64,000 nucleotides of DNA from Amphiscolops sp. MND2022 (taxonomy: Eukaryota), in contig OZ076415.1 of assembly GCA_964187785.1 (NCBI GenBank), positions 48,794,001 through 48,858,000 on the forward strand, given 5' to 3'. The translations under genes were made by a program, and so were the position numbers. A model generated the notes under the pieces. The model was not told the DNA's origin. It searched no databases and saw only the letters and a list, made by a program, of their open reading frames with translations. Positions 1 through 25,762 of this stretch are shown here, one piece after another (position 1 is the first letter of the stretch; the number at the start of each line of letters is the position of its first letter).

Positions 1-874
1 GGACCATCTTCCTTGTCCCTACCACCCCAGAGACACCTTGTTTCTTATCCCCACAAAACGAAGTTGTTTCGACACTTGAAGCAAAAATTACCCGGATAAA
101 TTAAAATGAGCAACAAAAACGAGCTCCATTTTGAATGATTGACAAAAAAAATGAAACAATATCAGCCTTGTTTACAAATATGGCAATTTTTAAAAACAAA
201 TTTTCTCATGTTCCACTTTTTGATTGGGGTGAAATGAACGCACACTGGTAAAATAATTCAGGACTGAAAGTATACCTTTGCTCAAAAAACGTCTTGATGA
301 ATTGATAGAATGCAATTAATTTTTTTGACTCATTTGTGATGTCAAAATGAAAAATTGAAACTTGTTCTTAAGATCTCATTTTAATAATTAAATAATCGAA
401 TAATTCAACTCACGTCTTTTCATGAACGTTGTTAATTGATGCGACGAAATTGCTGATGACAATATTTTTGACGACGAAATTTCTGGATTTGCTAATACGA
501 CAAATTTTCTGACGATGAAACTTCTTGCGGCGAAATTTCCGCCTTCTCTTTTTGTAACCAATGAAAGGCTGTACGAAAAGAGTCAAAATTAGATAAATAT
601 CGGAAAATGTGGCATCTTTGGTATCATTTTGAGGCACTTTTTTCCAGTTGAATTCTGCGGAACAACCTCTATAATTTCGGTATATATCAACATATCAAAA
701 TTCGGAACTTTTTCAGAGCTGCAATTTTTCTTTCTGGCTTTAGATATTGCATGAAAATTTTAACCCAAAAGTCAGAAAAAGCAATATAAAACAATCTCAA
801 TTTTTTTTGATTTCGAAACACCATCAATTTGTTTCTTGTTCGCATGAATTTCTTATTCATTAGATATAACTGAC

Positions 875-3800
875 CTGTGAAAAGTCTTCTGTAAGTTGGG
901 TCAAAACTTATAGCAGTTATCTCCAAGTTTATAATTCTGCCGTTAATGTTCCACGTGTGGCATCCGCTGAACTGCATCAGTTTTTTGCCAGTTTTGTAGT
1001 CCCACACACAAACTGTGGAGTACTGGTCTGCTGATACTACTACCTCGAAAACGGGGTTATACAAAACACAGGTGACCCCCTTGCCATGTGATTTGGGATC
1101 TTCCATCTTTTTGGCGTCTTTTTTGGCAGACAGATTTCCGGTGCGCTCTCTGTACACGATCTCCTTGGTTGCGAGTAACAGTTTACCTGGAATGTTGAAA
1201 TGTTGAACAGGTTCGACGTAAAATTTGCAAATTGTGTTCTTGATAAAAGAATTGGGAAAAACTTTGCAGTGAGAAAGAAAATTTACGAAATTTGCAAAAA
1301 AAGCTTCAAAAGTTGTGGAATCAAATTGCATGAAAGAAAATACAAAAAAACACGGATGGTCTGAAATATAGACTCTGACCTTGAGTTAGTTTCCATTTGG
1401 TCTACTTTGACGTTTCTGTGGAATTCAGGCATTGCAGAAGCGAAATATGACCAAAATGTTGGCTGTCAAAAGTCATCGAGGTTTTTTCTAACATCTTTTT
1501 AGAAGTTCCAGTTTAGTTGTATTACAACAAATTAGCATTCAAACTTTTCTCGAAGGTTAGTTAATTCTATCAAGACATTATGCAATGTTTATGAAACCAC
1601 CTGTTGCAGTGTACAGTGTACTGCAAGTGTGTAAAGAAAGGCGTTTACCATCCTGAGGCGCGAAGAGCACGGCAGAAACGTCGTGAGGTTGCAAGTGGGG
1701 GTAGTTCGCGTTGAACGATTGAGTGACCTTGGTCTCGGGAATGTCCCACACTTTCACATAATTATCCGCAGAGAAGCTGATGACGTCATTTGAGGGATAG
1801 GTGACAATGTACTATCACTGATAAGGTTATCAATGACTCATTGGTTATGATATAATTGATGCTGACACTAAATTTGTATTCCTATATCACAGCAGTGTTG
1901 AGGAAACCCAGTAAAAGTCAAAGAAGTGTCATGCATTTTAAATGAAACTTTCTATTTGAAAACATTTGATTCTAAAACATTATTTTCGCAAATACTTTCA
2001 ATTTTTTAGTCGGTTTTAGTGTCATTTGTCAATCTGAGCTCAAATCTGAGCACTAGTGCATTTTTTGAGCTTCTCAAGCTCATTCCTTGTCCGAAACCCC
2101 TTATCATCCCATACTTGACTCAATCCTTCATTCCAGGTTACTTGCCATGCATTATATGATTTTTTAAAAAGGGATTGAAAGAAATAAATAGATAAACTTA
2201 TTTTGAGTGGCCTTTTTACCGATTTAAAGTAAGATAATATATCACCTGATAGGGACTTAAAAAGCAAAAATACTAACTAAAACCTAATATACTTGATGAT
2301 TTTTTTTGGTTCAGAGTAGAAACTCTATTTCACTGGATGTTTTAAAAAAATTAGTAAAGTGGTAAAAATTATTATTGGTATCCTTCTATCCCTGATGATG
2401 GTATTGGTGGGGTGATCTATGCTGAGGTATTCCACACGTGCGTTGTGTCCCACGAGGATGTTCAGGGGCTGACTGGGCATATAGGGGTCCCAGATCTTCA
2501 CCCTCTGGTCCACCCCCGCGGTGATTACCACATTCAGCTCTTCCGAATAGTCGAAACAAGTGATACCTTCAAAATGAATGAGAAGTTCGAGGTTGAGGTT
2601 CACTAATTGTGAAAAAGAGCGGAAAGGAAACAAACATGAATTGGAAGCCGTAAGAATATAAAGGTCAGTGAACACAATGAAATTTAAAGGTCAGAAGGTT
2701 CATTGAAAACACTTTACATGTAAAAATTATTCAAATTTTGATCGATTATTTTCCACTATACATGTATGTTTGACAAACATTTTGAATTATTTCTGTCGTT
2801 GTATTTTCCAAAATTGTCTTTTTTTAAATTAACGTGTGATGAAGTATAAGGCCCGACAATTGAAGTCATTTTTCGTCATTTCTTTCAATACTGTCAAAGT
2901 CAAGTGACCAAATAGTTCTACAGAAACAATACAATACTGTATGAACATTAAATTTGTTATAAAATTGAACAAAATTGTTTCCAATTAAGCATAAATCGCA
3001 TAAAAAACTGTCTATAATTCCGAAGCACATACCCATATTTACCTTTAGTGACATTAAACACATAGGGCGGTCTCCCATTTTCCCGCAAGAGGGATACGAC
3101 CATGGATTTTTTGGAAGACCAGGAGCAAGATATGAACTGTTTGGAAGAAGGAAGGTACATGATTTGTCTGGTCCAGCTGGCATGGATGTTCACGTGTTGA
3201 AACGATTTGCAGTGTGGGAATTTCCCACTGAAGTAGACATCCATTCCCATCTCCTTCTTGGAGTTCAAAAAAGCCTCTGTTGCGAAGCCGGTCATCTGCG
3301 ACTCGTACAGTTGAACTATGAAGACACTACCGCCTGAAATGAGACTCAAAATTTTTCCCCCTAAAAATCCAGGCCACAGTTTTTTTCGTTCAAAAATTTT
3401 GTTCGTAATTTTTCTCTCAACTGCAATTTGTCAAAGAGTGCCCACTTATTAGTGAGTTGATCGAGGGAATTGTGAGTTACCGATCGAACCAACCAATTGG
3501 AGACAACCTTTCTATATTAATTGTGGAACCTAAGTTGCCAAAAACGTTGGTTCCACTCATTCTACTAACTTTAGTTAAGGAAACTTTGCTACTATTCTAA
3601 ATAGGAAATAACGTTGGCCTGACGAGATACATCTCAGATACATTTTTTCGGCATTGTGAGACTTTTCTTCAATTTTTTCATAAGAGGGTTTCCAATGCAC
3701 CAATCCTTTGACATTTTGAAGTCCTTTTGCTATTTTTGAGCCTTAGATATGGCGCCGACTTGGGCCGTTCCCGGCTTGTTTTTTAAACAATCATTTCAGT

Positions 3801-6800
3801 ATATTATGAATCCATATTTTTCGACACACTCCACTCATTACACTCTAGCGTACCTGTATCACCCCAGAATAGTATACTGTGGTTTGTGTTTCTGTAGTCA
3901 TAGTGGTAGAAAAGACACTCAGCACTATGGGGCAGTTTGGTCACTGTGAACTGTCTCTCGAACTTGTTGATGTCGAAGAACCACAATTCGTTCAGAGTAG
4001 AGGCTACCACGATAAGGTTAAGGTTACTCAGCACTGCCAGGTCTCGACAGCATAGAGGCACGTACCCTCTTGAGGGACAGCGCATCTTGCGGATGTGACG
4101 CATGTCGTGGCTCCACACGTTCACAACTCCAGACTGAAACAGTGGATCTTGTCAAAGGGTGCTAATTCTGCCAAAATTGTGAATCCGATTTGTGATGAGA
4201 ACAAGCCGTGACCGGCCCAAGTCGGCGCCCCGCTCAAGTTTCTTGAATATGCAAAACATACTGTTTTAAAAATTCTATCACTTTCACAGTGCCGAAAAAT
4301 ACCCCAAAGTATACGCATAAGACTCGGAAACCACCTTTTCCCCAACTGGAAAGGAACAATCATATTTCGAAAAAAAAATTGGAAAAGTCTCATAGTGCCG
4401 AAACAAGAACTTTCAGCTCGAAAAACTACCTTTTCTCAACCCGAAATTCGTTACAAACGTGGGAGGGCACGTTTTGACCAAATGAAAGTTCCGGAAAAAC
4501 GCACAGAGCCAAAAAAAGCTTTAACAAAGTATGAAAAAGTATTGAGAATAAAGCAGCTGCTCGGTTAAGTTGAAAAAGAAGAAGGTGTCACAATCCAAAA
4601 AATCCAAATGGGGAGACCCTTCGGTTTCAAATGATTTTGTACCAACTCTAAATATCCTAAAAATCAAATGGGGGACCCTTTTGTAACATTGAAAGATTTT
4701 CCAAGAAACGTTATATCCGATATACGTTATATCCGGAATTTGTTATAACCGGTTTGCGTTAAATCCGGTATGGGTCTTGGTATTGTCGAAGGGGTTATTG
4801 TCTGATCGAAAAAAAACACTGACTAAAAGCCATGAATAAAGTCGACTCGTTTCTTAAGAAAAGCGTCGACTAAAGTAGGCATTTGTAATTTCGCATCTAT
4901 CATCAGAATTAGGGAAGCGAGATAGCTTTTCAAAAGAAGGAGAAAAACAATTTAAAATGAAAATTTTTATGTGCCAAAGATACTCGGTTGACATCAGTGA
5001 AAATTCAAGTTAGCAATGTTGCAAAAATATTATTATTAGTTGCGGCATGTAATGTTCGAGAACGGACTAATAAATAAAAATTATTAACTGTTATCTGATT
5101 AAATGTTATCCCAGATAAAAATTTGAAACTCTTGCCAAGGTCTTGCACTTTCTTACTTTCTTGCATACCGTTGCATACTTTTCTTGCACTTTCTTGCATA
5201 CCGTTTTTTATCTTTATAATTAACAGTTTTTCTGAAATGCATCCTTGAAAAATGAACAACCAAAAACAGCTGTAATTCCGTCAAACCAGTAATTCTGAGT
5301 AAAAGCTGAGTTTTCATTTTGTGATCATTTTGCGATGTCAATTCATAAGCAGGGCATTTTCAGAAAAGGTGTTGAAACAAAAAAGTTAGAGATCTGAATC
5401 AAAGGTACAGAATTTGTTGCAGGACTTTCTTGTTATGAAAACGGTTTCCGAAATATTGCATGATAAACTTCAGCCAAACGTCAAAAATAAGCTAAGTGTT
5501 ATAACTTTTGTAAATTTTGATCAAAACAAAAATTCCCTGTAATTCTGATCAAAATTGAACATTTTGTTTCTGGGACTCTTGTGTCAAATGAATATATGTT
5601 AAATGTTCTTGCGATTTAATTTTTAGTCAGCGAAACCTTGTGTATTTTGCTATTTGTTACCCTAGTGTATGCAGTACGTTTTGAGCAGAAAATGTTGAAA
5701 CTTATCCTCCAGAGAAAGTCACAAAAAAAACACAAAAATCAATTTTCTCCAATTTCAACCGTTTTACTGAATTTTCTTACATTTTTCGTGTTTTTATTAG
5801 GTATGAATCACCACAGCGATCAAAGACGCAATATTTGCTTCTTTAGCGAATTTCAGTAAAGAACGCTTTTATATAGGAAAAAACCATTAATTTCCTAATC
5901 GGAAGCTAAAAATTGTCAATTTCCGAAAGTTTGATGCTAAGTAACAAAACGTTTGGCTACTAAAAATCCTTGATTTCGAGAAACATTTATTCAAGGTAGT
6001 CCGTGAAACAAGACGCACCGTCCTGTTTAACAAGACGCACCGAAATAAATTAGCTACATTTTCTCAACGTTCGAGTGTGAGAACATCTATTTTCAATTGG
6101 TTTCACGGACTACCTTGAATAGATATTTCTCGAAATCAAAGATATTTAATAGACAAACCATTTGTGATTTAGCATCAAACTTTCTGAAATTGACAATTTT
6201 CAGCTTTTGATTAGGAAATTAATGTAATTTTTCTAATGTAAAAGCATTTTTTTTTCTGAAATTCGCTAAAGAAGCGACTATTGCGTTTTTGAACGCTGTG
6301 GTGATTCAAACCTAATAAAAATCCTAAAAATGTACGAAAGGTTAACACGGTTGAAATGAGAAATTTGGTTTTTGTGGGCTTTTTGTGCCTTTCTCTGGAG
6401 AAAAATTTTCAAATTAGGAGAGAAAACTCGAGAAAACAACATGTGCAGCTAGAGTTCAGTCGCGTTCGTTTGCAGGCGCTCGCTTTATTGTTGACAGTAT
6501 TACGTAATAGCATTCAATTTAATACATTGCAGAGCTTCATCCTTTGAATTTATCTTGAAATTGACATCTCAATCTTTGAAATGGAGTTATCGGATTCCGA
6601 AATGAAACAACTTGTACTCAAATTATCAGGAAAAATTGAGCAGCTTGAAGCAAAAGTTACTCGCCAAGAATCCCAGATTGTTACTTTGACAAATGAACTT
6701 ACGGATCTCAAAGAAAGGGTATCGGCGCAAGAGAGATATACAAGCAAAGACTGTATCATATTCTACAACTTCCCGATAGATGCTGCTTCAGATGATTTGG

Positions 6801-9800
6801 ATATCGACATGTGCAGGGCCATCAAACATCACTTCAATTATGAGCTGTCTGCAGGTGATCTGAAAGCCTGTCATCCTCTCAGAAGGCCCCAAAACACAGG
6901 TTTGAGCGTTCCAATAATAATAAAATTCATCTACTTCCGGGACAAAAACGAAATCTATGCCAGAAGGAAAATGCTCGCTGGTTTTCAGTTCAAAGGTAAA
7001 AATCTTTTCATTACTGAACGACTTCCTGCAGCTGCACTTGAAGTCAAAAAAGCATGTGAAGAAGAAAATTTAGTAACTACAACACACAATTGCGAGGTCA
7101 AAGTTTTTCTGAAAGACCCTAAAGGAATGGTTTATAGTCAAAAAGTGGGTTCAACTCTCGCAGTGAAGCAGTTAAAGGACAAAGCCATTAAACGGTAACC
7201 CAGAACGAATGACAAAGTCAGTATGCAGCGAAAAGACAATAAACGCAATTTAGAGGACGTTGAGAACGCAGAGACTAACAATATGAGTACACATGAGGCT
7301 ACGCCTATTATGAAGAAGCTCAACAATAACAATTCGCCAACACTGGAGGCACTGGGCGGCGCTAATGCATGCGAATGAAAGTGGAAACTCCAAATTTGAT
7401 TAAAAACTTTGCTGTTGATCAATCATTAGCATATTCTAGGTTATTAACGCTACTAGGCTTAAACATTAGGTCCTTGGGATTCCATCATGACGAGTTAAAC
7501 ATATTACTAAATACTTTTGAGCATAAACCGGTTGTTCTGGCACTAACAGAAACATGGATAGCTGAAAATGACCCCCTTGATGAATACGACATCTTAGGAT
7601 ATCAACCCATTGAATCTACCCCTAGGCTGAACTGCAAGAGAAGATCAGGCGGTGTTGCATTTTACGTCCAAGATGGCTATTATTTCAAGCCCATCGGCTT
7701 CAATACAGAAATTGAAAGTTCTATCATAGAAATTAGGCTAGACGATAACAACACCAAAAATGTTTGTGTCATCTACCGACCGGATACATTTCGAGTGAAC
7801 AAGTTTTTGGATCATTTCGAGAAACTACTCTATTTTCTCAGCTCACTCAGGTCAGAAACGGTTATTTTCGGTGATTTCAATATCGATACACTCATAGACG
7901 ACACTGAGAGTAGAAAGTACATAAATCTACTGAAGGCATTTGGTTTTGAAATTCAAATAATTTACCTACAAGGATAACAATCAACTCCAAAAGCTGCATT
8001 GATCATATAATTACCCAAAAAAATATTCAGACCGACACCATCAAAACTACCATAAGTGATCATTTCACAGTTATGGCTGATCTCGGTATCAAAACAGAGT
8101 CTTATAGTAATACAAATAGTTACACTTCCCGAAATTTGAGAAACCTAAAGAATGAAAATGCAATAAAATTTCTTTTCTTCTTGAATCATGAGTTAGGTAA
8201 AATGAACAAAGCTGCTCCAATTGATGATAAAGTTGAATATCTTGCTAAAACAATCATGAGATGTGTTGATAAATATGCACCCGAGAAAAAAATGAATAAA
8301 TTAACGCCAAAACAATCATGGATAACGAACGAAATAAAAAATCTAATCACAAAACGAGACGCACTGTTCGAAAAATGGATACTTAGTCCGACAGAAGAAA
8401 ACCATATAGCGTACAAAACTATACGCAACAAAGTTACTCACATTATAAGGACAGAAAAAAGCAAGCTAATTTCGACGCACTTGGTCAAAATCCTAGTCCC
8501 AAGAAAATATATGCAACGCTCAAATCTAAAAAACGACAGAGTGAGATGAGTAAATTTGCACCGGATGCGGATGCAATCAATGAATATTTCGCCCAGATTG
8601 GATCTGTTCTCGCTGCGGAAATTAAACCTATTGATAACAAAATTAAGATTAACAGAGTGAAAGACACAATGGTTACAACACCAACAAACTTACAAGAAAT
8701 TGCGAGAATTCTGAAGCACCTAAAAAACAAAAAAAGTAGTGGTCATGATGGAATCTCAAATGAAATTCTCAAGTGTTGCTCACCAGTCATAGAACCAATT
8801 CTTGCAGAAATTTTCAATGAGATGATTGAATTTTCGATATACCCAGATTGGATGAAATTAGCAAAAATTACTTCCCTGTATAAAAAAGGTGATAGAAACC
8901 TCCCAGAGAACTACCGCCCCATCAGTTTGATAAGTTCCCTAAGTAAGGTTTTTGAAAAACTTCTATTGAAACGAATGATGTCTTTTTGCTCAAAGCATAA
9001 AATTCTCACATCAGCCCAGTTTGGGTTTCGACCAAAGATGTCATGTGTACAAGCTATCATCAGAGTAACAGAATGTCTACGGGAGCAAATTGACAAAAAA
9101 AATGACTGGACAAGCATGCTTCATTGACCTCAAAAAAGCTTTCGATACTTTAAATCACGAAATTTTATTAAACAAGTTGGAAAATTACGGTTTCAGAGAA
9201 AAAATTAACGAAATTTTAGGAAGTTTTTTGAGAGACCGAAAGCAATATGTCAGATTGAATGAAATCGAAACTGATAAACTAACTGTCCAAATAGGTGTAC
9301 CACAAGGATCTGTTCTGGGACCGTTTCTTTTCCTTATATAAAATCAATGACCTTCCTGCTTCATGTGAGAAGGCAGAAGTAGCAATGTTTGCTGACGATA
9401 CGACTCTAATTAAATCAGGAAAAAGAGTTGATCCTCTTCTTAGCCAAGAAATTAATTGCGTACGGGATTGGTTCTTATCAAATAAATTGACAGTTAACCC
9501 TGAAAAATGTGAAGCAATGTGTTTTGGTTATGGGAAACCGGACACAATTAAAATCGGGGTCTCTGAATTGAATTATAAAGCATCCTGTAGGTATCTGGGA
9601 GTTCACTTGGATAAAAAACTCCTTTTCCGAGAGCACATAGATTATGTTGTAAAAAAACTAAATAAGTTCTGTGGTCTTATATACAGAGTCCGTCACTTTT
9701 ATCCACGGAAATGTCTTTTAATGTTTTATAACTCTTTTGCAAAATCAGTTATCTGCTATGGTCTACTGGTTTATGGTAGTGCAGCGAAAACAAATTTACA

Positions 9801-12800
9801 AAAAATTGATTGTGCACAGAGGCGAATATTGAGAGCAATTTTTTTCAAAAAGAAGTTTGATTCAATGGTCAATGTATTAGCAGACAACAAAATTCTCAAC
9901 GTTTTTGAACTTTTCATGGTGGAAGTAATTCAAGAGTTGTTCAAGCAAATTCGAAAGGAATCATCTTTGGAACTGTCTCTAACTTTTACTACAGGCAAAT
10001 CAATAAGCACTAGGAGGGCGGTCAAAGGATTTCTGGATGTACCTTGTAGCCAAACAATAGTGAAGCGAAAATCGTTGTCAAATACTATGATAAGAGCTTA
10101 TAATTGGTTGCTGGATTTTGATTTAATTCCAGAGAACTTAGGAGATTCAACCAAAAACCAAATCAAAATGTATATCAAGGACATTTTGTCAGTCTACATC
10201 ATGAACAATAGAGGTTTGATGGAAATATTTTACTAAAAGTGTTTTAGCAATACTTAATATTTAATTGTGCTGAGATTGATCAAATGGGCACAAACTTGAA
10301 GAGCACTGATGCTCATTTTGTGTCCACATTGGATTTTCTATACCTTTATGAATACTTTAATGTATGTCATGTATATTAATCCAATGAAATTCAATGTTTC
10401 AAAATTTTATGCATAGTCTGAGCATGCCTTTTCGTAGTAGCAAAATTACTGTAGACTGGACCCTACAAGATTGACCAAGATCTTTGTCGTTCCAAAAAAG
10501 CAAAGCAAGATGTCCAAATTTTCTGACCAGAGAGACCATTTTCACCTCTGTGAGCGGAATAAACATTAACCTTTTGTCATATTATCCTTATAAATCATGA
10601 ATGATCTTGAATGAGAAAATCTCCCTGAAAAGTTGAGACATTGCTAAAACATTATCACGTGGAAGGGGTGACTAGCCTTGACATGTTTACAACATGAAGT
10701 ATGCTTAAAAATCGAAAATTTTATAATAAAGTAATAAAAGAAAATCACCGGTTAAATCTTTTGGTATCAAAGCTAACTGCTTTCTCATGACAAATTGTAC
10801 AGTTAATTGCATTTCGGGGCATCCTGGAGGGCACTTATGATTCCGTACTGCCCTTTGTAGGGGCCATAAAGGTTTGAGTCTAAGCTGACCATAATGAAGG
10901 CCAAATATGACACCAGCTTGATTAGATTTTTGAAAATTGTTTTGAATGCCAAACTATATAAAGCCGGAAGGTCAGATCCTGGTCGGAAAACCAGGTACAA
11001 TTTACTCCAAAACATTTTTCAACACTCAAAATAAACAAAAAACGTTCAAAGTCGAAACACTTTTGACAACTGAAAATTAGTGCAACCCAAATTAGTGAAA
11101 AAACGTTCCATAGTGTCAAAACACCTGAAGTAGGACTCTTTACGCTCTAAAAGCGTACTGCGCTAAGTGAAAACAAAAGAAAATTGAAAAAATTGAAAGG
11201 GGACCCTTCATTGTAATATGAAAAACTTTTGAGATTGTGTGCCGAGAAAAAAGTACAATGTCGAAAGCCCAAAGGGGGGACACGTTGATTTTGTCTAGAT
11301 ATAAAACCAATTGGGAAGATCTTTTCCCATCCCCCAAGTGCCGCTCGCCGCGAAAAGCTGTAAAAAGTGGCATTTTCAGTGTCAGCTCTGTTCTTACAAC
11401 ATGCCCTGACTGAAAGTTTCGTGTTTTCGTGAGTAATCATCACCATTTTGATGGAAGTAATAATGCATTTACATGAACTTGTGAATATATGTGGAACAGT
11501 GATGAAAACCTCGTGTTTCAGGTTCTTATTTCAGGAACATGAATTTTTATACTTTCAAAGATTTAAATTCAAAGCCAAAAAGAGAAAAAGTATCTGCAAG
11601 CCATGGTTTTCTTTTACATCGAAGTACAGTTTACATCGAAGTCGGAAGTTGTTACAAAGTTGCAAAAATTTAAAATGAATAGCAGGCTTGGTTTAGATTA
11701 CAATTTTCATATTCGTCATGAAGTTGTTCAGTTTGTTCACGGATCTTTCTCGCATCTTCTTCCGAGTGAAGCTGTTTACTTCCGGAGTTCGGCTCAAAGT
11801 TGACAATCTGTTGCCGAACTCTCTCGGGTCCGCCATTCCCTTCTCGTAATCGTTTGTCGTCGTTTCCATGAATGGACAGCTGTCTTTGTCGGGCCAATAC
11901 AGAAGTCTCAAAACGTAACCACATCTCTTCACGTGATCTAATGTAGATATTCTTGGCTCGTAGAAAGACTTGTTTTCTTTTCCCGCCTCAGGTCCGCATG
12001 AAAATTTCCCTGGGTAATCTTCTGCCAGGGAATCAATGATTGACAGCTTCGGTGCCTTGGAATATAACTTTTCCTCTGAGAAAAAGCCGAACACGTCATG
12101 AAGCGAAGTTGATAGAGCAAACTGGCCTTCTTGTCGTCGACTCAATACGTCACTGATTGCCGGATGCACGCTGAAGTCTTTCAGGTGTGAATACTTTCTA
12201 AATTCACGCTCGAAAATGAAACTATTGTTGAACAATTTTTTCTGGCAGATTAAAATTCTAAAAAAAGGAATCAAGTGAATTTCGTTTCCTTTCGCCGAGT
12301 CAAAAATCAAGCTTTTCACCAGCAAGTGAATGGATTCGCGCGGGAAAAACACATTACCGTCAAGGGGTAATACCCATAGCGGGTTATATAACTTTATAGC
12401 AATCGAAATAGCGTAGTTTCTGGCAGAATTGACATTTAAAATCTGGTCTAGTCGTTCCGTAGAATTAGCCGAACATTCTGCGCTTCTGTAATACTCCTGG
12501 TTGAATTCTTCCAAGATTTTAACCAATCGCATCTCAGATTCGGAATCCATCATGCACTGAATGAGCCAAAAGCTTTTAATGCAACTCTGGGATTTTTGAA
12601 CTTCAATTTCATGGGTCAAAATGTGACGCAAATTCAGTTCCATCTGCTGAGGACTTTGCAAAGGCGGTAAACTGGGTCCCAGAATTCTAACTATGACGGC
12701 AAAAGTATTTGGCTTAGTTGAATTTTGGCTGGTTGTTTCACATAGTGACGGGTGGGTTTTCTGCTTCTCATGGATTATTCGTTCGGAATTGTAGTTTTGA

Positions 12801-15800
12801 GTTTCCTTGAAACTTGTGAAATGTGGGAGAGAATCCAAAATCGATAGAACTGATAAAATGATATTGGTCAAGGCCAACACGATTGCAACTGCACTAAGGA
12901 ATTGAATTTTGTTTGAAGGTTTCGGTGACATCATTTTCGCTGTGTTTTCGAATATTTCTTTTAGTTTTTAAAAAACCAAATCAGGGAGTAGTAAAATCAA
13001 CCTGCTTAAGTGAAGGAAGATGCAGAACTTTATGAAGCACTGGAGGCAATTGAATGAAATGATTTCATTCGAAGAACAGAAGTGATAAAAGGCAAACAAA
13101 GGCGCCAACACCAGATTAGTGAGAGCCAACGCCAATTAAAACCAGTAGACAGGTACTTTGAACTCAAATCAAGAAATTGCCAGATTTAAAGCGTACAATT
13201 CATATCAATTCTAAAAAGTGACAACTCATATCAAGCGATAACACATACCAAGCGATAACACATACCAAGCGATAACTCAAATGATGAAAATTAAAATCTA
13301 TATAAGAAAATTTATTCCAAATAATTCATAAGATAATTAGAGAAAATTAGATAATTGACAAGTAATTATTAGAGATTATAACTCATATCAAGCGATAACA
13401 TATCTCACAGCCATAACTCATTTTTTAAATTGAATATGAGTTGTCGCTATACTGATTTAAAAGTCACGAAGACTACAGGTAATTTTTGTTTGCCTTTGCT
13501 TACTTTTTTGCAATTCGAAAGTTCGTTATATGCTAAGCACTTTTTGACTGACAGCTCAATTAGGATTTACACTTCGTTTCAAGACACCACTTTATGTTTT
13601 GTTTAACCATATTTGATCGTGTTAATAAACCGTGAAAACTTGCTTGACCTTGAACAACAACTAGTACTACAAAATGACCCAAAAACAGTAACTGCTCGCA
13701 AAAAGAAGCTACAAGGTAACCAAAAAAGACGGAACGCAAAAAATGGCGCTCGCAAAGTTTCAACGTTGCTGTCAATTATTCAAATTAGTTTCTTTCAGAA
13801 AGGAAAAAGTTTTCACACATTAAAAGTTAGAACGAAATGACTGGGCAAGGCGTTTAAATGCATTCTTTTGTATGGTTTGAACCACCCTTAGTTGAAAATG
13901 AAATATGAGCTTTAATCAACATGATTGACAGAACAATTGAAAGATTTTCAGTACCTTGTTTACAAATGATACGATTTTGGAAACGCAATTGTTTGTGTAT
14001 TCCGTTTTTTGGTTAACCTAGTGAACTAGAAGCATTCCAAGTTTTTATTACACGAGAGCTCCATCTTGAATGATTGAAAAGTTTTCGATGTCTTATTTAC
14101 AAATTTTACGATTGCTTGTTTCGAAGGAATTTAGTGTTTTAGTGTAACGAAACGCATAAATTAGTTCCGATTTTTTTTCTGGGATACCTGCAAGGGGCTA
14201 AGAGCTTTAGTAAAGAGTTTTGAGGGCATTTCAAATCAATGATGAAACTTCTCAACATCTTGTCAAAATATCCAGGCCCATCAATGGGACGCCTTTGACA
14301 GAGAACTTTCAGACTTCAAAACATGCCCGTAGACGTTTGGGATCTCAGTAATGATCTCAGTTTGGGATCTCTCACGCCCATGTGATCTCAGTACGCGGAG
14401 GGAAAATCTCCAAAGCTTTCCAGATGATCACAGCGAGAAAATTGAAGTTTAAAAATACAATGAGAATAATCAGGTACTAAATATACAATCAAGAGAAACA
14501 TGTTATTTGATGACTAACTTCGTCAAGGGTGAAATACCTGCCCCTGCCGGGTATGGGGGCACAGTGAGTGAAGGTCACACTGCGAGTGAGGGGGTAGAAC
14601 CTCATTTTTGTCACTAACGCACTGTGTTTGCGGGGCAACTCCACTTCGTCGTTGGAAAAGGGAGTTTCTGCCATCATTGCCTGCAAAAGTTTATGGTGAA
14701 AGATTGTTTGTGTTACACGGTAAATCTTTTATCTGAAACCTGGAACGTTTCAAACAAGTCACCAAATGAGGTACCATACCCAACGATCAAAGACACGCTA
14801 CGCTTGCCAAGATCATGGTTAATCTTGCTAAATCATGGTTATTGCAACTATATTGACCGTTTTAGTAAGATGATTTTCGGAACTAGTTATGATGATTGCT
14901 GAATAATAATCGTTCAAATATTTGAATAATGAAACATTTGTGTCTGTTTCTGTAAGTTTGGCAGTTTTGAAGAAACGTGAAAATGAGAATTCTGTTCTTC
15001 AGAGCAAAAGCACGTTTCAAAGTTTCATGTAATCGAAAAACAAAATGTTTGGATCCAGAATGGTGTTTTTTGTTTTGATTCAATTATTGTCTGGAATTTT
15101 TGATTAGGATAAAATATAACATTTGAAAAACCATGAAAATGAATAGTCCTTTGATATAATGTCACTGATCACTTACCTGGAAGCAAAAAAGGCCTGTTTG
15201 AAAGCGCAGCTGCAATCACAAGCAATGAACAAAGAACTACATGTTTGGTCGCTTTCCAATGTTTGAGAAATACGGGTTAGGAATTAAGGATGTACATGTC
15301 ATAATAAGCCTATGGTACAAAAGCAAAGCACCCATCGCAAATATTAATATAAAACACTTGATCTTATTATTATTATTTGAATTTTCATGTTCAATTTTTA
15401 TAAATGGACAGCTTCTCCAATTGTCATCTCATACTAGTACCAGCTGGCACTCCACGGTAATCCACAGACGGCCACCGGTGAAGAAATATTTGCCTCATGT
15501 GACATGGGGCTAGATGTCAATCAATCTCATCCAATATCTTTATTGACAGCGTAGTACCAGTCTGAAAGTATTGTAATCTAACTCTAAACGTTGACGTATT
15601 CACTTTACGTTTGAACTTTACATGGATCAGAATAGACTATTCAGCGACACTTTCGTCAAATGAATTGTTAAGATTGACATTACAACATGGCACAGTACAA
15701 AGGTAAACATCTGAAATAACCTGAGAGCACGAGTTCCTCAAATAAGGAAAGAATTGAAAGAGCGAACACAAAAGAAAAAGAAAAAACCCACCAAAAGAAA

Positions 15801-21800: not shown

Positions 21801-24800
21801 AAGACCCTCAAAATTACAGACCAATCAGTCTTTTGAGTTCATTGAGCAAAATTTTCGAAAAAATCATTCATAAACAAATGATGAACTTCTGTCGAACTAA
21901 CAAGTTGCTCAACCCGAGACAATATGGATTTAGAGACAAAATGTCTTGCACTGATGCGATCGCTGCCATAACTGATTTTATTAGAAACGCGATAGATAAA
22001 AAACTGACCGGGCAAGCCTGTTACATTGATCTACAGAAAGCGTTTGATACCCTTGATCATAAAATTTTGCTGAATAATATGGAAAAACTTGGATTGCGCG
22101 GAAATATCAACCATCTAATTGGCAGTTATTTAACTAATAGATGGCAATACATTAAAGCTAATAGCATGAGCACAGAAAAACTAAAATTTTGCACGGGAGT
22201 TCCCCAGGGATCCGTTCTAGGGCATTTTTTGTTTCTTCTTTACATCAATGACCTTCCAAATGTCTGCCAAAATAGTCAAATGATGATTTTTGCCGATGAT
22301 ACAACCATTATTAATGCAGGAAAACGTACTGATTCTCCAATCAAAAATGATATTGTAGCTGTTTCCAAATGGTTTAAATCTAGCAAGTTGACGATCAATA
22401 CTGATAAGTGCGAGGCAATGTTTTTTGGCTGCGGCAAGCCTGATAATTTGAACATACTGTCGAAAGAACTTGGTAACCAAAATTCATGCAAGTATTTAGG
22501 TGTTCACATAGATAAAACCTTAAAATTTAGAGAGCACATTGATCATGTGGTGAAGAAACTCAATATATTCTGCGGCTTGATGTATAGAGTAAGACATTTG
22601 TATCCTAGAAAATGCCTCCCAATGTTCTACAATTCATATGCTAAATCAGTAATAACATATGGTCTACTATTATACGGTACTGCTGCCAAATCGAATCTAT
22701 CAAAAATTGAAACTGTGCAAAGAAGAATATTGAGAGCAAGTTATTTCAAAAGAAAATCTGATTCGTTGGAAAATGTACTTGCAGACAATAAAATTCTGAC
22801 TGTGTTTGAACTTTTCATGGTAGAAATACTGAAAGAATTATTTCGTCAATCGAAGTCTGAATCACCTTGCATCCTTCTTCAAATAAACCAAAACTCCGAT
22901 CCTAAATTTCAAACAAGGTGGAATAAAAGGAACCTGTATACTCCTACATATAGCAGAACTGTTACTAATAGTAAATCTCTGACCAATTGCCTTCAAAAAG
23001 CATACAATTGGTTAAAAAACTTGGATCTTGTTCCTTCCTCACCCTGGAAAATGTCTCCACGTCAATTAAAACAGTATATACCGAAAATCACATCACTGTA
23101 TATTGTTGACAACAAACAACTATTAGAACTGTTTTATAATTCATTGAAAAAAAACCTCTACAAGCGTCATTTACCTCATTGATAACAAATCATTGGCTTC
23201 AACTTGGCATCAAGAGCGTAAACTCGAAGAGCATCCTTTTGCTCCTTTTACGTCCTCTTTGGGTGCTTCTAAATACATCTTTTTGTATTTTATTGCTACT
23301 CAATGAAATTAAATCTTATCTTATCTTTTCGAAACTTTTTTATTGTCTCCAAAGAGTTCAAAGGGTCACATTTTGGCACTATGCGGCCCACCGGAGACCT
23401 TCATAAAAAATTTTCCAATTTATTTCGTTTTTTGAAAGTCTCAAGTTGGGGAAAAAGCGTTTTTTGAGTCTTGTGCGTATACCTTGGGGCATTTTATGGC
23501 ACTGTAAATTTGATGAAATTTTAAAAAAGTCCTTTTGCGTATTTAAAAAACGTTTAATTTTTGAACCTCGAGCAGCGGTCTTTCCTTTGGTAGCGCATAG
23601 GTTCACCTATGGCCACCACAAAGTGTTTCATGGCCTCCGTAGTTGCCATTGATGGTTTCCTCTACGCTGTCAACCCGGGTTATGATTCCTAACCCTCTAG
23701 GAAACAAAAGTGTTTAAAAATGGGAAAAGTTTGTTTTGCTATCTTGAATAGTCACCATTTCGTGAGCACTGTATTTCATTGAGTTCATTTAATCAGCGAA
23801 AGATAACTTGATGGAGTTTGATTGAAATTTTCAGTACGACTTGTAAAACTTATCAATGAATGAGCCGCGAAAACGCTGTTTAATGAAAAAATCTTACCTT
23901 TGTGTTCTAAAGCTCAAAAATATACAGCGAGGAAAACAGAATGAGAAATAAAAAAGCGAGACATCTTGAGTGAATCCATTCCATCAACATTTTCTTTTTT
24001 AAATGTAGGTTTTCACGGTTGTTAAACTCTAAGTACCTCAATAAACGAATGAATTGAATTCTCGGTTTGTTTACCATGCTCTGACCTTTTAAACACTTTT
24101 TTATGATTCAAACGACCCTTGCTGAAGATACTCTTCAATATTTTGACTTCAGTTTGCTTCTTACTGAACCTGAAGGTTGATTTTCGCAACGATCTTTCCT
24201 TCAAATTGAAATTTGTATTATAATGATAACAACCAGTCATTGCGCTAAATATGAAAAAAGTGGGAGCGGAAGGTGTATGGGGAATTTCGCTCATCATATA
24301 GTTCATGTATAAAATCACTCGAGAGCCTCCAGAACAACAACCGGATTAGCCAATGCGTCCAAAGGGTCCAAAGGGTCACATTGTTGACACTATGCGACTC
24401 ACCGGAGACCTTCATCAAAATTTTTCCGAAATTTTTTGTTTTTTGAAAGTTTCAAGTTGGGGAAAAAGTGTTTTTCGAGACTTATGCGTATCCCTTGGAG
24501 CATTTTATTGGACTGTTTTAATAGCAGCTATTCAGTTTTTATTGTACGACAGTTCAGTAAGCTTAGTTTTATACTGTATTTCAATGAGAGCATCGTGGAA
24601 AGCGTGGGACATTTTTGCAAGAGCTCCCAACAGAAATAGTGTGACGTGGTTACCTTGATGAGATCTTTCTCGAGGTATTCAAGGAGGAGATAGGATAAAA
24701 ATTCGTCCCAGTCAACGGTGCCATCGCAATTGGTATCCACTTTCATGAAGATCTTCTCCAGTTCTCGATCATCGGTCGCTTCTCCTAGTACTTTCTTCAT

Positions 24801-25762
24801 TGCCACTGCAATCATCATAAACTAAATAACTAAATTTACAACCTGTTCTGTTTTAAAACCGATAAGCACAAAAACTGGGTCACAAAAACGCAGAAAATGC
24901 ATTAAATCTTGCAGAAGGTCACAAAGAATCTTCTAGTAATTTCTTAAAAAAAAACGCAAGAAGAATGAATCATTTCGTCAGATACATTTCGTCAGCCGTA
25001 ACTCCATTCCATCATAATGAAGGGAATCGATGGATCTCATAGGATTCGGAGCTCATGATCACCATGGTATGAAGTTTCATTTCAAGCCAAGCGCGTTGGG
25101 ACTCCGGGGAGCCATTACGGCTGTTTTGCTACGTTTTTGTGCAAAAATTAAGCAAATTCTTCCTGTTCATTTTTTCTCTACAACAAGCACCGCACCGTCT
25201 ATATTGATCAAACTACCAGGCTCATTCATCAAAAATGCACCATTATAAAACTGAGCAGTTGACTTTTGCCTGATGAGGTTACACCGAGGAGAATACGGTG
25301 AAAATACTCCATTGACATATTGATTTTGTCATTTTGGGACCCAATGTGCATGAATATGTTTTCAGATCCTGCGAAGTTTGAAATTTCAGTTATGATATTT
25401 CGAACGACAACAGAAGAGAAGTTGGTGACAGCTGTGATTCTAATACTTCGAAAAATATCAAGCCTTGCATTTTAAGTTGTTATAAATATCATTGATTATT
25501 AAACATCTTCGATGTTTTCAATGCAACATTAACCTTTGAACTCGTCAATGTCTAGTCCCCCTCCCCCGTCCTCGTCTGCCTCCTCGAATATCTCCTGCAT
25601 GCGAATGAGGTCATCCTGTCCGGTGTCTTGGTCTAGAGAACTGCCCCCCGCTGTGGACTGGGCAGAACCCCCCTCGTGCGCGGCACCTCCGCTGCTGGCC
25701 TCAGACATTCGACTGTTGGCACTGCTTCTGGCTGCTCCCGAGTAAACTCTCTGGCTGCTCAT
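875..25762 (-). CDS. EF-hand + WD40-repeat protein (WDR49/WDR64/EFCAB8/WDY-like family), multi-exon, 3' part beyond left edge
   Basis: Exons assembled by hand with phase-consistent junctions: 25762-25534, 24805-24654, 14680-14519, 4133-3854, 3333-3043, 2566-2392, 1776-1649, 1186-875. EF-hand loops FEEADEDGGGGLDIDEF and FMKVDTNCDGTVDWDEF. WD40 repeats GHNARVEYLSIDHPTNTIISFSADNYVKVWD and SHGKGVTCVLYNPVFEVVVSADQYSTVCVWD. All junctions are GT-AG except the donor at 2391 (GG). Confidence 0.85.
3700..3782 (-). repeat. Terminus of Helentron/HINE-like non-autonomous repeat
   Basis: ggcgccgacttgggccgttcccggcttgtt is the reverse complement of the terminus seen at 4200, 25930 and 39478. Confidence 0.6.
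4200..4700 (+). repeat. Helentron/HINE-like non-autonomous repeat copy
   Basis: Starts aacaagccgtgaccggcccaagtcggcgcc. Internal gggg(g)accctt units are shared with other copies. Confidence 0.6.
5700..6425. mobile_element. Foldback/MITE-like element with ~320-bp imperfect inverted arms
   Basis: 5700-6020 is an imperfect reverse complement of 6100-6420, e.g. ttgatttcgagaaacatttattcaaggtagtccgtgaaac vs gtttcacggactaccttgaatagatatttctcgaaatcaa. The loop is ~80 bp. Confidence 0.7.
6581..7378 (+). pseudogene. LINE ORF1 (coiled coil + RRM-like nucleic acid chaperone)
   Basis: Coiled-coil N-terminus, then FYNFP / DLKACHPL / IIIKF / FITERLP motifs. One in-frame TAA at 7196-7198; the same frame continues to TGA at 7378. 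Confidence 0.75.
7369..10236 (+). pseudogene. LINE ORF2 (apurinic endonuclease + reverse transcriptase), frameshifted
   Basis: APE motifs LALTETW, SGGVAFYV, IFGDFNID, SDH. RT motifs NYRPISL, DLKKAFDT, GVPQGSVLGP, FADDT, YLGV. About four frameshifts (near 7960, 8470-8545, 9100, 9340). Confidence 0.9.
11140..11360. repeat. Internal fragment of the HINE-like repeat
   Basis: gaaaggggacccttcattg and aaagggggga units match other copies. Confidence 0.45.
11693..12934 (-). CDS. Intronless 413-aa type II membrane protein, putative GT-A-fold glycosyltransferase-like, nested in intron 3 of the WD40 gene
   Basis: Uninterrupted ATG-started ORF. N-terminal signal anchor FLSAVAIVLALTNIILSVLSIL. Motifs IVRILGPSLPP, LNLRHILTHE, NVNSARNYAI, WVLPLDGNVFF. 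The family assignment is from memory. Confidence 0.7.
   Translation of the reverse strand: MMSPKPSNKIQFLSAVAIVLALTNIILSVLSILDSLPHFTSFKETQNYNSERIIHEKQKTHPSLCETTSQNSTKPNTFAVIVRILGPSLPPLQSPQQMELNLRHILTHEIEVQKSQSCIKSFWLIQCMMDSESEMRLVKILEEFNQEYYRSAECSANSTERLDQILNVNSARNYAISIAIKLYNPLWVLPLDGNVFFPRESIHLLVKSLIFDSAKGNEIHLIPFFRILICQKKLFNNSFIFEREFRKYSHLKDFSVHPAISDVLSRRQEGQFALSTSLHDVFGFFSEEKLYSKAPKLSIIDSLAEDYPGKFSCGPEAGKENKSFYEPRISTLDHVKRCGYVLRLLYWPDKDSCPFMETTTNDYEKGMADPREFGNRLSTLSRTPEVNSFTRKKMRERSVNKLNNFMTNMKIVI
13217..13453. repeat. MITE remnant with (a/t)caagcgataac subterminal repeats
   Basis: Repeated gataactcatatcaagcgataac units. Inverted ends gacaactcatat / atatgagttgtc. Confidence 0.5.
15498..18064 (+). 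mobile_element. Old, internally deleted Ty3/Gypsy-type LTR element
   Basis: Diverged direct repeats 15498-15687 and 17874-18064, both TGTGACA...AACA. PBS-like tggcacagt after the 5' LTR and PPT ggagggagat before the 3' LTR. Degenerate gag/pol-like interior. No clear TSD. Confidence 0.75.
19375..20254 (+). pseudogene. LINE ORF1 (coiled coil + RRM-like), one frameshift near 19945
   Basis: FVSNLP, DLQACHPL, VLVRF and IYLRERLT motifs, homologous to ORF1 of copy 1. Confidence 0.75.
20306..23182 (+). pseudogene. LINE ORF2 (APE + RT) with a single in-frame stop
   Basis: ORFs 20306-21244 and 21347-23182 are in the same frame, separated by TAA at 21242-21244. Motifs IETW, SGGVAFYV, FGDFNID, SDH, NYRPISL, DLQKAFDT, GVPQGSVLG, FADDT. 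Confidence 0.92.
24340..24520. repeat. HINE-like repeat fragment
   Basis: Near-duplicate of 23355-23520 (aaagggtcacat...caccggagaccttcat...). Confidence 0.55.

What the first reader, a model, noticed from the sequence alone, without database searches (positions are those of the whole stretch)
11693..12934. Intronless glycosyltransferase-like gene nested on the same strand in a 10-kb intron: horizontal transfer candidate
Seen: an intact 413-aa single-exon ORF with a signal anchor, in a genome whose other host genes are multi-exon. It is flanked by decayed repeats and lies on the same strand inside intron 3 of the WD40 gene. From memory (not searched), its motifs RILGPSLPP / NLRHILTHE / NVNSARNYAI / WVLPLDGNVFF / QEGQFAL / YSKAPKL parallel a poorly characterised family (YRILGNDLPPRH, NNNGARN, W.LP.DGNCF, EEPQIAF) in bacteria, algae and fungi that is often fused to alginate-lyase domains and is rare in animals. 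Inference: an acquired Golgi/surface glycan enzyme.
Basis: partly seen in the sequence, partly recalled or inferred. Interest (0 to 1): 0.7.

Follow-up and report, generated by a model that had tools for sequence, protein, structure and literature searches.

The report
Intronless sugar-transferase gene of acoel family
This is a real, conserved, single-exon gene for a membrane-anchored sugar-adding enzyme of an uncurated family that is mostly bacterial, but it is one of at least eight copies inherited within acoel-type worms, not a fresh gene transfer.

Summary
The 413-aa ORF is real, but it lies on the minus strand (11693-12934). It has an N-terminal signal anchor. Its predicted structure (pLDDT 83) is a GT-A glycosyltransferase fold (Z 11-13 to CHSY3/CHPF, LARGE1, TarP and SpsA).

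No Pfam, NCBIfam, PHROG or PDB sequence match exists.

The reading as a horizontal-transfer candidate holds only for the family's deep origin, not for this gene.
- The same 1.07-Gb animal genome has at least seven further family loci, and at least five of them contain GT-AG introns.
- Each of five tested paralogues pairs with its own orthologue in other eukaryote-type assemblies.
- One member is a RefSeq gene of the acoel Convolutriloba macropyga.
- The window gene's orthologue (71% identical) gives dN/dS of about 0.08.
- Read depth equals that of the flanks, and base composition is host-like.

The gene is therefore a vertically inherited, intronless member of a family expanded in this lineage. 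The family probably came from bacteria or viruses long ago.

No RNA data were available. The donor sugar and the acceptor are unknown. Nesting in an EF-hand/WD40 gene is plausible but only partly verified.

The parts
11693..12934 (-). Complete single-exon coding sequence, 413 aa plus stop. It is the window's member of the GT-A-like family.
   Evidence: ORF listed. Identical protein P0001/P0009 found. Orthologues are 71% and 58% identical. dN/dS is about 0.08. Depth is single-copy and equal to the flanks.
12836..12907 (-). N-terminal hydrophobic signal anchor (residues 10-33), implying type-II membrane topology.
   Evidence: Kyte-Doolittle maximum of 2.6 over 19 residues starting at residue 15. 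Modelled as a helix at 9-35. Homologues carry a hydrophobic N-terminus in the same place.
11885..12709 (-). GT-A-fold catalytic domain (residues about 76-350).
   Evidence: The AlphaFold model has pLDDT mostly above 90 in this stretch. VIA-align gives Z 11-13 over model residues about 66-400 to GT-A glycosyltransferases. Foldseek gives probability 1.0 to LARGE1 and SpsA.
12416..12436 (-). NVNSARN motif (residues 167-173), the family's counterpart of the GT2-type N-x-G-x-x-ARN nucleotide-sugar-binding motif.
   Evidence: N169 is invariant, and R172 and N173 are at least 90% conserved in A1. The bacterial branch has NNNGARN, invariant in A2. The equivalence with the GT2 motif is an inference from established GT2 signatures.
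12353..12370 (-). LPLDGN motif (residues 189-194), occupying the place of the GT-A DxD motif. Only the first Asp (D192) is conserved.
   Evidence: D192 is at least 90% conserved and G193 is invariant in A1. The bacterial branch has WDGNCF with invariant D and G. The motif follows strand 187-192 of the model.
24528..25762 (-). Context: two EF-hand-coding exon candidates of the presumed host gene, upstream of the ORF on the same strand.
   Evidence: Pfam EF-hand_7 and EF-hand_1 matches.
687..4124 (-). Context: WD40-coding exon candidates of the presumed host gene, downstream of the ORF on the same strand.
   Evidence: Pfam WD40 matches in 687-1331 and 2325-2675. The fragment at 3804-4124 gave no Pfam match.
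6581..10236 (+). Context: decayed, frame-broken LINE copy (endonuclease plus reverse transcriptase) between the ORF and the WD40 exons. Its 3' end is the high-copy repeat next to the ORF block.
   Evidence: The ORF pieces look like broken counterparts of the parts of the copy at 19357-23182, judged by eye and not aligned or scanned. In the identical locus L016, Pfam Exo_endo_phos and RVT_1 are recorded on the matching ORFs. Depth at 10000-10551 is in the thousands.

Best explanation
The ORF is a functional, independently translated gene of the host animal, which appears to be an acoel-type worm. It encodes a type-II membrane protein. A short cytoplasmic N-terminus and one signal-anchor helix are followed by a lumenal GT-A-fold glycosyltransferase domain.

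The most likely function is transfer of a sugar from a nucleotide-sugar donor onto a glycan in the Golgi or secretory pathway. The domain belongs to a sequence family with no curated model. That family is widespread in bacteria, where it is usually fused to an alginate-lyase-like domain, and is patchy in eukaryotes.

In this animal lineage the family has expanded to at least eight loci. The window gene is the intronless member of a pair of old paralogues (C7 and C4). The pair was already duplicated before this species split from the species that carries P0002, P0003 and P0004.

The gene has been inherited vertically under purifying selection and is not a recent horizontal acquisition.

Shown: the ORF, the fold, family membership, the paralogues and their introns, the orthologue pairs, selection, and single-copy depth.

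Inferred: glycosyltransferase activity, lumenal topology, the catalytic roles of D192 and E269, and the acoel identity of the unnamed assemblies.
For: ORF and anchor.

Fold: AlphaFold pLDDT 83 and pTM 0.79. VIA-align gives Z 13.2 to CHSY3/CHPF, 12.5 to RmlT, 11.9 to LARGE1 and TarP, and 11.0 to SpsA. The top 25 rows are all glycosyltransferases. Foldseek gives probability 1.0.

Family:
- 204 hits at E<=1e-3 among 1.84 billion representatives.
- A profile of 30 members recovers all listed hits at E of 1e-27 or better.
- Conserved motifs are shared with the bacterial branch.
- Alginate_lyase fusions are confirmed.
- 186 confirmed loci occur across many bacterial phyla.
- By predicted shape, the nearest ESM Atlas clusters are a bacterial alginate-lyase fusion and a viral 274-aa protein, both TM 0.56 by query.

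Vertical inheritance:
- The own genome has at least 8 loci.
- C4, C8, C1b and C3 show GT..AG introns.
- Tree pairs: C7+P0002+P0003 0.99, C4+P0004 0.999, C8+P0034 0.999, C3+P0039 0.99, C1b+P0055 0.96. The C7 group is sister to the C4 group at 0.99.
- The Convolutriloba macropyga RefSeq protein sits inside the clade.

Selection: dN 0.19 against pS 0.72 versus P0002.

Not a contaminant: depth about 60x equals the unique flanks, and one contig spans 10374-13242. GC 0.41 and GC3 0.47 are close to the host exons.
Against: - There is no transcript evidence. No RNA run holds the stretch, so expression and gene boundaries are unproven.
- No AATAAA or ATTAAA lies within 400 nt downstream.
- The classical DxD motif is absent; the sequence is D-G-N. 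Metal-dependent Leloir catalysis is therefore not assured, and the protein could use another mechanism or be a non-catalytic GT-A-like protein.
- Foldseek also lists nucleotidyltransferases of the same superfold (KdsB, RmlA, AGPase) at similar E-values.
- Only one clade member carries an organism name. The 'animal' identity of the other assemblies rests on their transposon and gene content and on unchecked notes from other agents.
- The four DNA runs and the identical ENA contig L016 come from one sample or data set. They are not independent of the assembly.
Confidence: 0.7

Rival explanations
1. Ancient horizontal transfer founded the whole family. A single intronless gene from a bacterium or a virus entered an ancestor of these worms. 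It then duplicated to at least 8 loci and gained introns independently in several copies. The window gene simply kept the original intronless state. This is a claim about origin and is compatible with the best explanation for the present-day gene.
For: - The family is overwhelmingly bacterial, with 186 loci across many phyla. Viral clusters are the nearest by protein-language-model features and by predicted shape.
- Named eukaryotic members are few and scattered: Closterium, Mesotaenium, a gregarine, one acoel.
- Orthologues in the other two assemblies are uninterrupted ORFs, while this genome's C4, C8 and C1b have introns.
- Intron positions are not shared between paralogues. Profile positions are about 80/207/244 in C8, 90/180/240 in C1b, 131/262/317 in C4 and 305 in C3.
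Against: - The tree is only midpoint-rooted.
- The animal-type clade groups with other eukaryotes (the gregarine group, support 0.87) rather than inside a named bacterial clade.
- Detection is biased towards intronless genes, because the protein collection comes from ORF calling on contigs.
- Most hits carry no taxon label, so absence from other animals was not shown.
- The gregarine transcriptome could contain sequence from its animal host.
Confidence: 0.4
2. Recent, individual horizontal transfer. On this view the ORF came directly from a bacterium, alga or virus into this intron, and its lack of introns reflects that.
For: The ORF is intronless, sits among repeats in an intron-like gap, and belongs to a family that is mostly bacterial.
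Against: - The closest relatives are eukaryote-type contigs at 71% and 58% identity. The next closest is an intron-bearing paralogue in the same genome.
- The best bacterial-type hits are only about 30-40% identical over parts of the protein, at E of 1e-9 or weaker.
- Synonymous sites against the orthologue are saturated, so the gene is old.
- Composition is host-like.
Confidence: 0.04
3. Retrogene. On this view the intronless copy arose by reverse transcription of the mRNA of an intron-containing family member and landed in the WD40 gene's intron.
For: The sister paralogue C4 has at least 3 introns while C7 has none. LINEs with reverse transcriptase lie on both sides.
Against: - There is no poly(A) tract (longest A run downstream is 5) and no obvious target-site duplication.
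- Identity to the closest paralogue is only 42-48%. Any retroposition would predate the split from the species carrying P0002, where the orthologue is also intronless, so hallmarks would have decayed.
- The C4 orthologue P0004 is itself intronless. This favours intron gain in C4 over intron loss in C7.
Confidence: 0.12
4. The protein has the GT-A fold but is not a Leloir glycosyltransferase. It could be a sugar-phosphate or nucleotidyl transferase, or a catalytically inert glycan-binding or regulatory protein.
For: - The DxD motif is replaced by D-G-N.
- No GT2 Pfam model matches, even at E<=1.
- Nucleotidyltransferases appear among the Foldseek hits.
Against: - All the best VIA-align matches (Z 11-13) are glycosyltransferases, and nucleotidyltransferases score lower at Z 9-10.
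- The N-x-N-x-ARN ... D-G motif pair resembles the GT2 donor-binding signature.
- Invariant polar residues (N169, D192, E269, R343) are kept from bacteria to animals, which argues for catalysis.
Confidence: 0.15

Closest known systems
GT2-type GT-A glycosyltransferases with solved structures (SpsA 1H7L, TarP 6H1J, TarS 5TZ8, K4CP 2Z86, PmHS2 8VIW)
   Same: The same Rossmann-like GT-A fold over about 175-215 aligned residues, Z 11-12. There is an Asn/Arg-rich motif before a hydrophobic strand that ends in Asp. N-x-N-x-ARN ... LDG resembles the GT2 N-x-G-x-x-ARN ... DxD signature (sequence; the comparison rests on established GT2 signatures).
   Different: No Pfam GT2 model matches. Sequence identity is 7-16%. 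The second acidic residue of DxD is replaced (D-G-N). The family also has its own motifs: R-x-L-G-x-x-L-P-P-L-Q/H near the first strand, and C-G-Y-x-x-R-L-x-Y-W-P near the C-terminus.
Animal Golgi GT-A enzymes that build acidic repeat polymers (CHSY3/CHPF 9Q8Z, LARGE1 7UI6)
   Same: These are the best structural matches (Z 13.2 and 11.9). They share the type-II membrane layout with a lumenal GT-A domain.
   Different: Those proteins have two GT domains, are 590-610 residues long in the solved chains, and belong to curated families. Here there is one domain and 8-14% identity. Nothing shows a shared substrate.
Bacterial 'alginate lyase family proteins' of about 700-1000 aa with an N-terminal uncurated GT-A-like domain (for example in Mesorhizobium loti DSM 2626 and Mesobacillus campisalis)
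   Same: The domains are homologous. A profile built from the animal clade finds them at E 1e-38 to 1e-67. Motifs are shared. The nearest ESM Atlas cluster by shape has TM 0.56 by query over 254 residues.
   Different: The bacterial proteins carry a C-terminal PF05426 lyase-like domain and lack the signal anchor. Many lack the C-terminal third that is conserved in the animal clade. The animal proteins have no lyase domain.
Convolutriloba macropyga LOC142358769 (RefSeq 'uncharacterized protein', P0043)
   Same: It belongs to the same family and the same animal-type clade. It is 49% identical to this genome's C9 paralogue.
   Different: It belongs to another subclade (II), not to the window gene's subclade (III). 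It is only 26% identical to the window protein. It has no functional annotation.

Membership tests
GT-A fold glycosyltransferase superfamily | A single Rossmann-like alpha/beta/alpha domain that superposes on solved GT-A enzymes | tested here: met
   Model pLDDT 83. VIA-align gives Z 11-13 with rmsd about 3 Å over 175-215 residues to many GT-A enzymes. Foldseek gives probability 1.0.
GT-A fold glycosyltransferase superfamily | DxD (Asp-x-Asp) metal/nucleotide-sugar-binding motif after the fourth strand | tested here: inconclusive
   Only the first Asp (D192) is conserved. The motif reads D-G-N here. Elsewhere in the animal clade it reads D-G-N/C/G/S, with D-G-D in one member (P0020). The aligned bacterial copies have D-G-N/A/G. 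Metal-independent GT-A enzymes exist (established knowledge), so this neither proves nor excludes activity.
CAZy/Pfam GT2 (PF00535 and related models) | A significant match to a GT2 sequence model | tested here: not met
   There is no GT2 model hit for the window protein at E<=1, nor for 30 family members at E<=0.01.
Uncurated 'GNDLPPRH / NNNGARN / WDGNCF / EEPQ' family (often fused to Alginate_lyase) | Significant sequence homology and shared motif set | tested here: met
   phmmer from the window protein reaches the lyase fusions at E 1e-9 to 1e-5. The clade profile reaches them at E 1e-38 or better. The window motifs RILGPSLPPLQ, NVNSARN, LPLDGN and QEGQ align to the bacterial motifs.
Uncurated 'GNDLPPRH / NNNGARN / WDGNCF / EEPQ' family (often fused to Alginate_lyase) | Fusion to a PF05426 Alginate_lyase domain | tested here: not met
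   The window protein and all 30 animal-clade members have no such domain. The fusion is a feature of the bacterial branch only.
Horizontally transferred gene (recent, this locus) | Absent from related genomes and from paralogous loci; nearest relatives in the donor group | tested here: not met
   There are at least 7 further loci in the same genome. Orthologues occur in two other eukaryote-type assemblies and in Convolutriloba. The nearest relatives are these, not bacteria.
Horizontally transferred gene (recent, this locus) | Atypical composition, or depth that differs from the host genome | tested here: not met
   GC 0.41 and GC3 0.47 compare with host exons at 0.42-0.59 and 0.52-0.62. Depth equals the unique flanks in four runs.
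Processed retrogene | Poly(A) remnant, target-site duplication, and an intron-containing parent of high identity | tested here: not met
   There is no A-run longer than 5 downstream. The closest paralogue is only 42-48% identical. Age could have erased these hallmarks.
Nested (intronic) gene | Host-gene exons on both sides, joined in one transcript | tested here: inconclusive
   EF-hand exons lie upstream and WD40 exons downstream on the same strand. No RNA is available to join them. The host exons were not found within 10 kb of the orthologues in the other assembly.

The most novel reading that the evidence does not exclude
A bacterial or viral GT-A enzyme gene was captured once by an ancestor of acoel worms. 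It then radiated into a lineage-specific family of Golgi glycosyltransferases (at least 8 loci here), with spliceosomal introns gained independently in different paralogues after duplication. This would give acoels a set of glycan-building activities that no other studied animal has. The window gene would be the copy that preserves the original intronless state.
Probability: 0.3. Interest if true: 0.6.

Novelty: new variant of a known kind. Interest (0 to 1): 0.42.

Why it matters
The gene points to a GT-A family that has no Pfam, NCBIfam or PHROG model and no solved structure, although it occurs in many bacterial phyla, in viruses, in streptophyte algae and in an expanded form in acoel-type worms.

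For glycobiology it is a candidate new glycosyltransferase family with an unusual D-G-N in place of the DxD motif. Its recurrent bacterial fusion to a polysaccharide-lyase-like domain hints at acidic polysaccharide substrates.

For animal genomics the family offers a compact test case. Orthologues 75-80% identical are intron-free in one species and carry three or four introns in another, so recent intron gain or loss can be examined directly.

The specific claim of a fresh horizontal transfer into an intron does not hold, which lowers the finding's surprise value.

Tried and rejected
1. Curated libraries. Pfam, NCBIfam, PHROGs and the PDB sequence search gave nothing for the window protein or for bacterial relatives.

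2. Related loci. The search for related loci with the broad alignment A1 failed because no stretch was conserved enough. It worked with a bacterial sub-alignment.

3. Taxon labels. The only names obtained were Convolutriloba, Polyplicarium, Closterium, Mesotaenium and one unnamed EukProt transcriptome. A full taxonomic breakdown could therefore not be made.

4. Synteny. Host EF-hand/WD40 exons were not found within 10 kb of the orthologues. Only the coding region aligns at the DNA level (75% over 993 nt).

5. Polinton cargo idea. A Polinton lies 2-8 kb upstream of orthologue P0002, and another lies at about 40-53 kb in the window. Their integrases are only 26% identical, host exons lie between the window's Polinton and the ORF, and the ORF is single-copy. 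I rejected the idea as coincidence.

6. Transposon-born introns (lead from s1-189753).
- Intron 1 of C8 contains a 217-bp repeat with more than 500 candidate copies, but the repeat does not span the intron.
- Intron 3 of C1b is unique.
- The lead is not supported for these two introns.

7. Expression. No RNA runs hold the stretch.

8. Independent assembly. ENA contig L016 is 100% identical over 21 kb, so it is the same data and not independent support.

9. Literature. Three full-text searches found no description of this family or of an acoel glycosyltransferase transfer. The two papers opened were irrelevant.

10. Bacterial gene neighbourhoods. The two loci examined gave no clear polysaccharide cluster. 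One has GT2 and ATP-grasp neighbours in Mesobacillus; the other has unrelated neighbours in M. loti.

Full report
**Observation**

The window holds an uninterrupted ATG-to-stop ORF of 413 aa at exactly 11693-12934, on the minus strand (sequence read). It is the longest non-transposon ORF in the first 30 kb. Residues 10-33 are strongly hydrophobic (Kyte-Doolittle maximum 2.6) and are modelled as one long helix at 9-35. This is the layout of a type-II signal anchor. The protein has four N-x-S/T sequons and eight cysteines. C313 and C338 are conserved across the animal clade, which fits a lumenal domain (inference).

In four DNA runs of one sample, the ORF and about 1 kb on each side have the same depth as other unique sequence (about 60, 95, 20 and 31). 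High-copy repeats border the block at 10000-10551 and 13128-13495, and a single contig spans 10374-13242. The stretch therefore behaves as single-copy host DNA. The runs come from one sample, and the identical ENA contig L016 (100% over 21 kb) is not independent.

**Surroundings**

Two EF-hand exon candidates lie upstream on the same strand (24528-24818 and 25529-25762). WD40 exon candidates lie downstream (687-1331 and 2325-2675). Two LINE copies on the plus strand fill much of the gap. Nesting in an EF-hand/WD40 gene is plausible. The 'intron 3' and '10 kb' details could not be checked, because no RNA run holds the stretch and no further exon was recognised.

**What the protein is**

Pfam, NCBIfam, PHROGs and the PDB sequence search find nothing. 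A phmmer scan of 1.84 billion cluster representatives finds 204 relatives at E<=1e-3.

An alignment of 30 of them (A1) shows these conserved motifs:
- R-x-L-G-x-x-L-P-P-L-Q
- N-x-N-x-A-R-N
- W-x-L-x-L-D-G-N-x-F
- Q-E-x-Q
- Y-x-K-x-x-K-L
- C-G-Y-x-x-R-L-x-Y-W-P

An AlphaFold model built on A1 has pLDDT 83 and pTM 0.79. An exhaustive structural comparison gives Z 11-13 to GT-A glycosyltransferases (CHSY3/CHPF, RmlT, WrtF, LARGE1, TarP, K4CP, TarS, PmHS2, SpsA). Nucleotidyltransferases of the same superfold score lower. Foldseek agrees.

The N-x-N-x-ARN ... L-D-G pair resembles the GT2 donor-binding signature, but the second acidic residue of DxD is missing. This is therefore a GT-A-fold enzyme of a distinct, uncurated family.

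Four of nine long hits carry Pfam Alginate_lyase. An alignment of their GT domains gives the recalled motifs: YRIIGNDLPPRH, NNNGARN, WxLPWDGNCF and EEPQ (A2). Two of these motifs find 186 confirmed loci in the GTDB species set. The listed hits include:
- Alpha- and Gammaproteobacteria
- Bacillota and Bacteroidota
- Planctomycetota and Verrucomicrobiota
- Chloroflexota and Spirochaetota
- Deinococcota and Desulfobacterota

The Mesorhizobium loti and Mesobacillus copies are lyase fusions. By predicted shape, the nearest ESM Atlas clusters are such a bacterial fusion and a 274-aa viral protein.

**Is it a horizontal transfer?**

The closest relatives are not bacterial. They are unnamed proteins on long, transposon-rich, eukaryote-type contigs in ENA assemblies.

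The window's own genome (1.07 Gb) contains at least seven further family loci:

| Locus | Structure |
|---|---|
| C3 | two exons |
| C4 | at least four exons |
| C8 | four or five exons |
| C1 at 95.24 Mb | four exons |
| C1 at 7.97-8.00 Mb | two tandem multi-exon genes |
| C9 | one large exon recovered; structure unresolved |

Donor and acceptor sites at the C4, C8, C1b and C3 junctions are canonical GT..AG.

In a tree of 160 domain sequences, all eight loci fall in one clade. It has three subclades and also contains the RefSeq protein of the acoel Convolutriloba macropyga. Five paralogues, including the window's, each pair with a different protein of other assemblies:

| Pair | Support |
|---|---|
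| C7 + P0002 + P0003 | 0.99 |
| C4 + P0004 | 0.999 |
| C8 + P0034 | 0.999 |
| C3 + P0039 | 0.99 |
| C1b + P0055 | 0.96 |

The C7 group is sister to the C4 group at 0.99. P0002, P0003, P0004 and P0034 come from one ENA sample. P0006, P0007 and P0055 come from another pair of samples. The duplications therefore predate the separation of these species, and the gene has been inherited vertically since.

Three further observations agree:
- Against P0002 (71% identity), dN is 0.19 while synonymous sites are saturated (pS 0.72), giving dN/dS of about 0.08 or less.
- GC and GC3 are close to those of the host exons.
- Two polymorphisms were seen inside the ORF, one synonymous and one K114N.

**Deep origin**

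Outside the animal-type clade, the nearest groups are:
- A small set that includes the gregarine Polyplicarium.
- A well-supported set that includes the streptophyte algae Closterium and Mesotaenium.
- The large bacterial and viral-like remainder.

The distribution is thus mainly prokaryotic with scattered eukaryotes, which fits ancient transfer into eukaryotes.

Two observations hint that the founder of the animal clade had no introns:
- Orthologues in the other assemblies are single ORFs where this genome's copies have introns. For example, C8 and P0034 are 75-80% identical, yet C8 has three or four introns and P0034 has none.
- Intron positions are not shared among paralogues.

Against this, the tree is only midpoint-rooted, most hits carry no taxon label, and ORF-based protein collections favour intronless genes. 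I rate ancient transfer at about 0.4. It is not shown.

**Other agents' notes**

Other agents in this scan call this genome 'acoel' or 'acoel-like'. My only own evidence is the Convolutriloba member nested in the clade.

Their lead that introns here can be born from miniature transposons was tested on two short introns and was not supported.

**Mechanism proposed**

The protein is anchored in the Golgi or secretory membrane by residues 10-33. The lumenal GT-A domain binds a nucleotide sugar through the N169/R172/N173 motif and D192. A conserved acid, most likely E269 of Q-E-G-Q, acts on the acceptor. These residue roles are inferred from conservation and from GT2 precedent. They were not tested.

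The recurrent bacterial fusion to a polysaccharide-lyase-like domain, and the best structural matches to enzymes that build acidic repeat polymers, weakly suggest uronic-acid-containing glycans as substrates. This is speculative.

**Verdict**

This is a real, selectively maintained, intronless gene. It is a new variant of a known kind: a GT-A glycosyltransferase of an uncurated family, expanded in acoel-type worms. It is not a fresh horizontal transfer. Interest is moderate.

Noticed in passing
G000:C8:59051626-59063569 (L017/L018) versus L025:3001-4014: Orthologues 75-80% identical differ in gene structure. This genome's C8 copy has three or four GT-AG introns (about 0.4, 7.2, 2.2 and 1.1 kb). 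The other assembly's P0034 is one uninterrupted 337-aa ORF. The same contrast holds for C4 versus P0004 and for C1b versus P0055. This points to recent intron gain here or intron loss there.
   Followed up: partly
G000:C8:59063159-59063375 (inside the first C8 intron): A 217-bp element with more than 500 candidate copies in the genome (77-89% identity) sits inside a 411-bp intron. It does not reach the splice sites.
   Followed up: partly
window 13128-13495 and 14784-14967: Short stretches have read depth in the thousands to tens of thousands, against about 60 for unique sequence. These are very high-copy short repeats directly upstream of the gene. The first contains tandem copies of a 'gttatcgcttg(g/a)tatg(a/t)' unit visible in the sequence.
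   Followed up: no
window 19357-23182 (+) and 6581-10236 (+): There are two copies of one LINE family. The ORFs of the upstream copy are intact (203-aa ORF1-like, 312-aa endonuclease, 611-aa reverse transcriptase). The copy nearer the gene is broken into five or more frames.
   Followed up: no
L001:1-8244 (contig of orthologue P0002): A Polinton/Maverick (double-jelly-roll capsid, rve integrase, family-B DNA polymerase) lies 2-8 kb upstream of the orthologous gene in the other assembly. The window has its own Polinton at about 40-53 kb. Their integrases are only 26% identical, so this looks like coincidence in Polinton-rich genomes.
   Followed up: partly
P0052 (1275 aa, unnamed; placed in the bacterial-type part of the tree) and L040/L066 (Kushneria sp. 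TE3): One alginate-lyase-fusion protein, unnamed and placed in the bacterial-type part of the tree, carries two copies of the GT-A-like domain flanking the Alginate_lyase domain. Kushneria has two family genes 34 kb apart on its chromosome.
   Followed up: no
P0101 (Closterium sp. Yama58-4, CAI5474277.1, 1784 aa): A streptophyte alga has the domain at residues 179-482 of a very long multidomain protein. The rest of the protein was not examined.
   Followed up: no
window 12593 and 12785: Two of the four runs show alternative bases inside the ORF. One is synonymous (S50). The other changes K114 to N in a poorly conserved loop. They are probably alleles of the sequenced material.
   Followed up: partly
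window 27513-30076 (-): Several long minus-strand ORFs lie in a G+C-richer block (0.41-0.44), and one looked retroelement-like on reading. None was scanned against Pfam.
   Followed up: no
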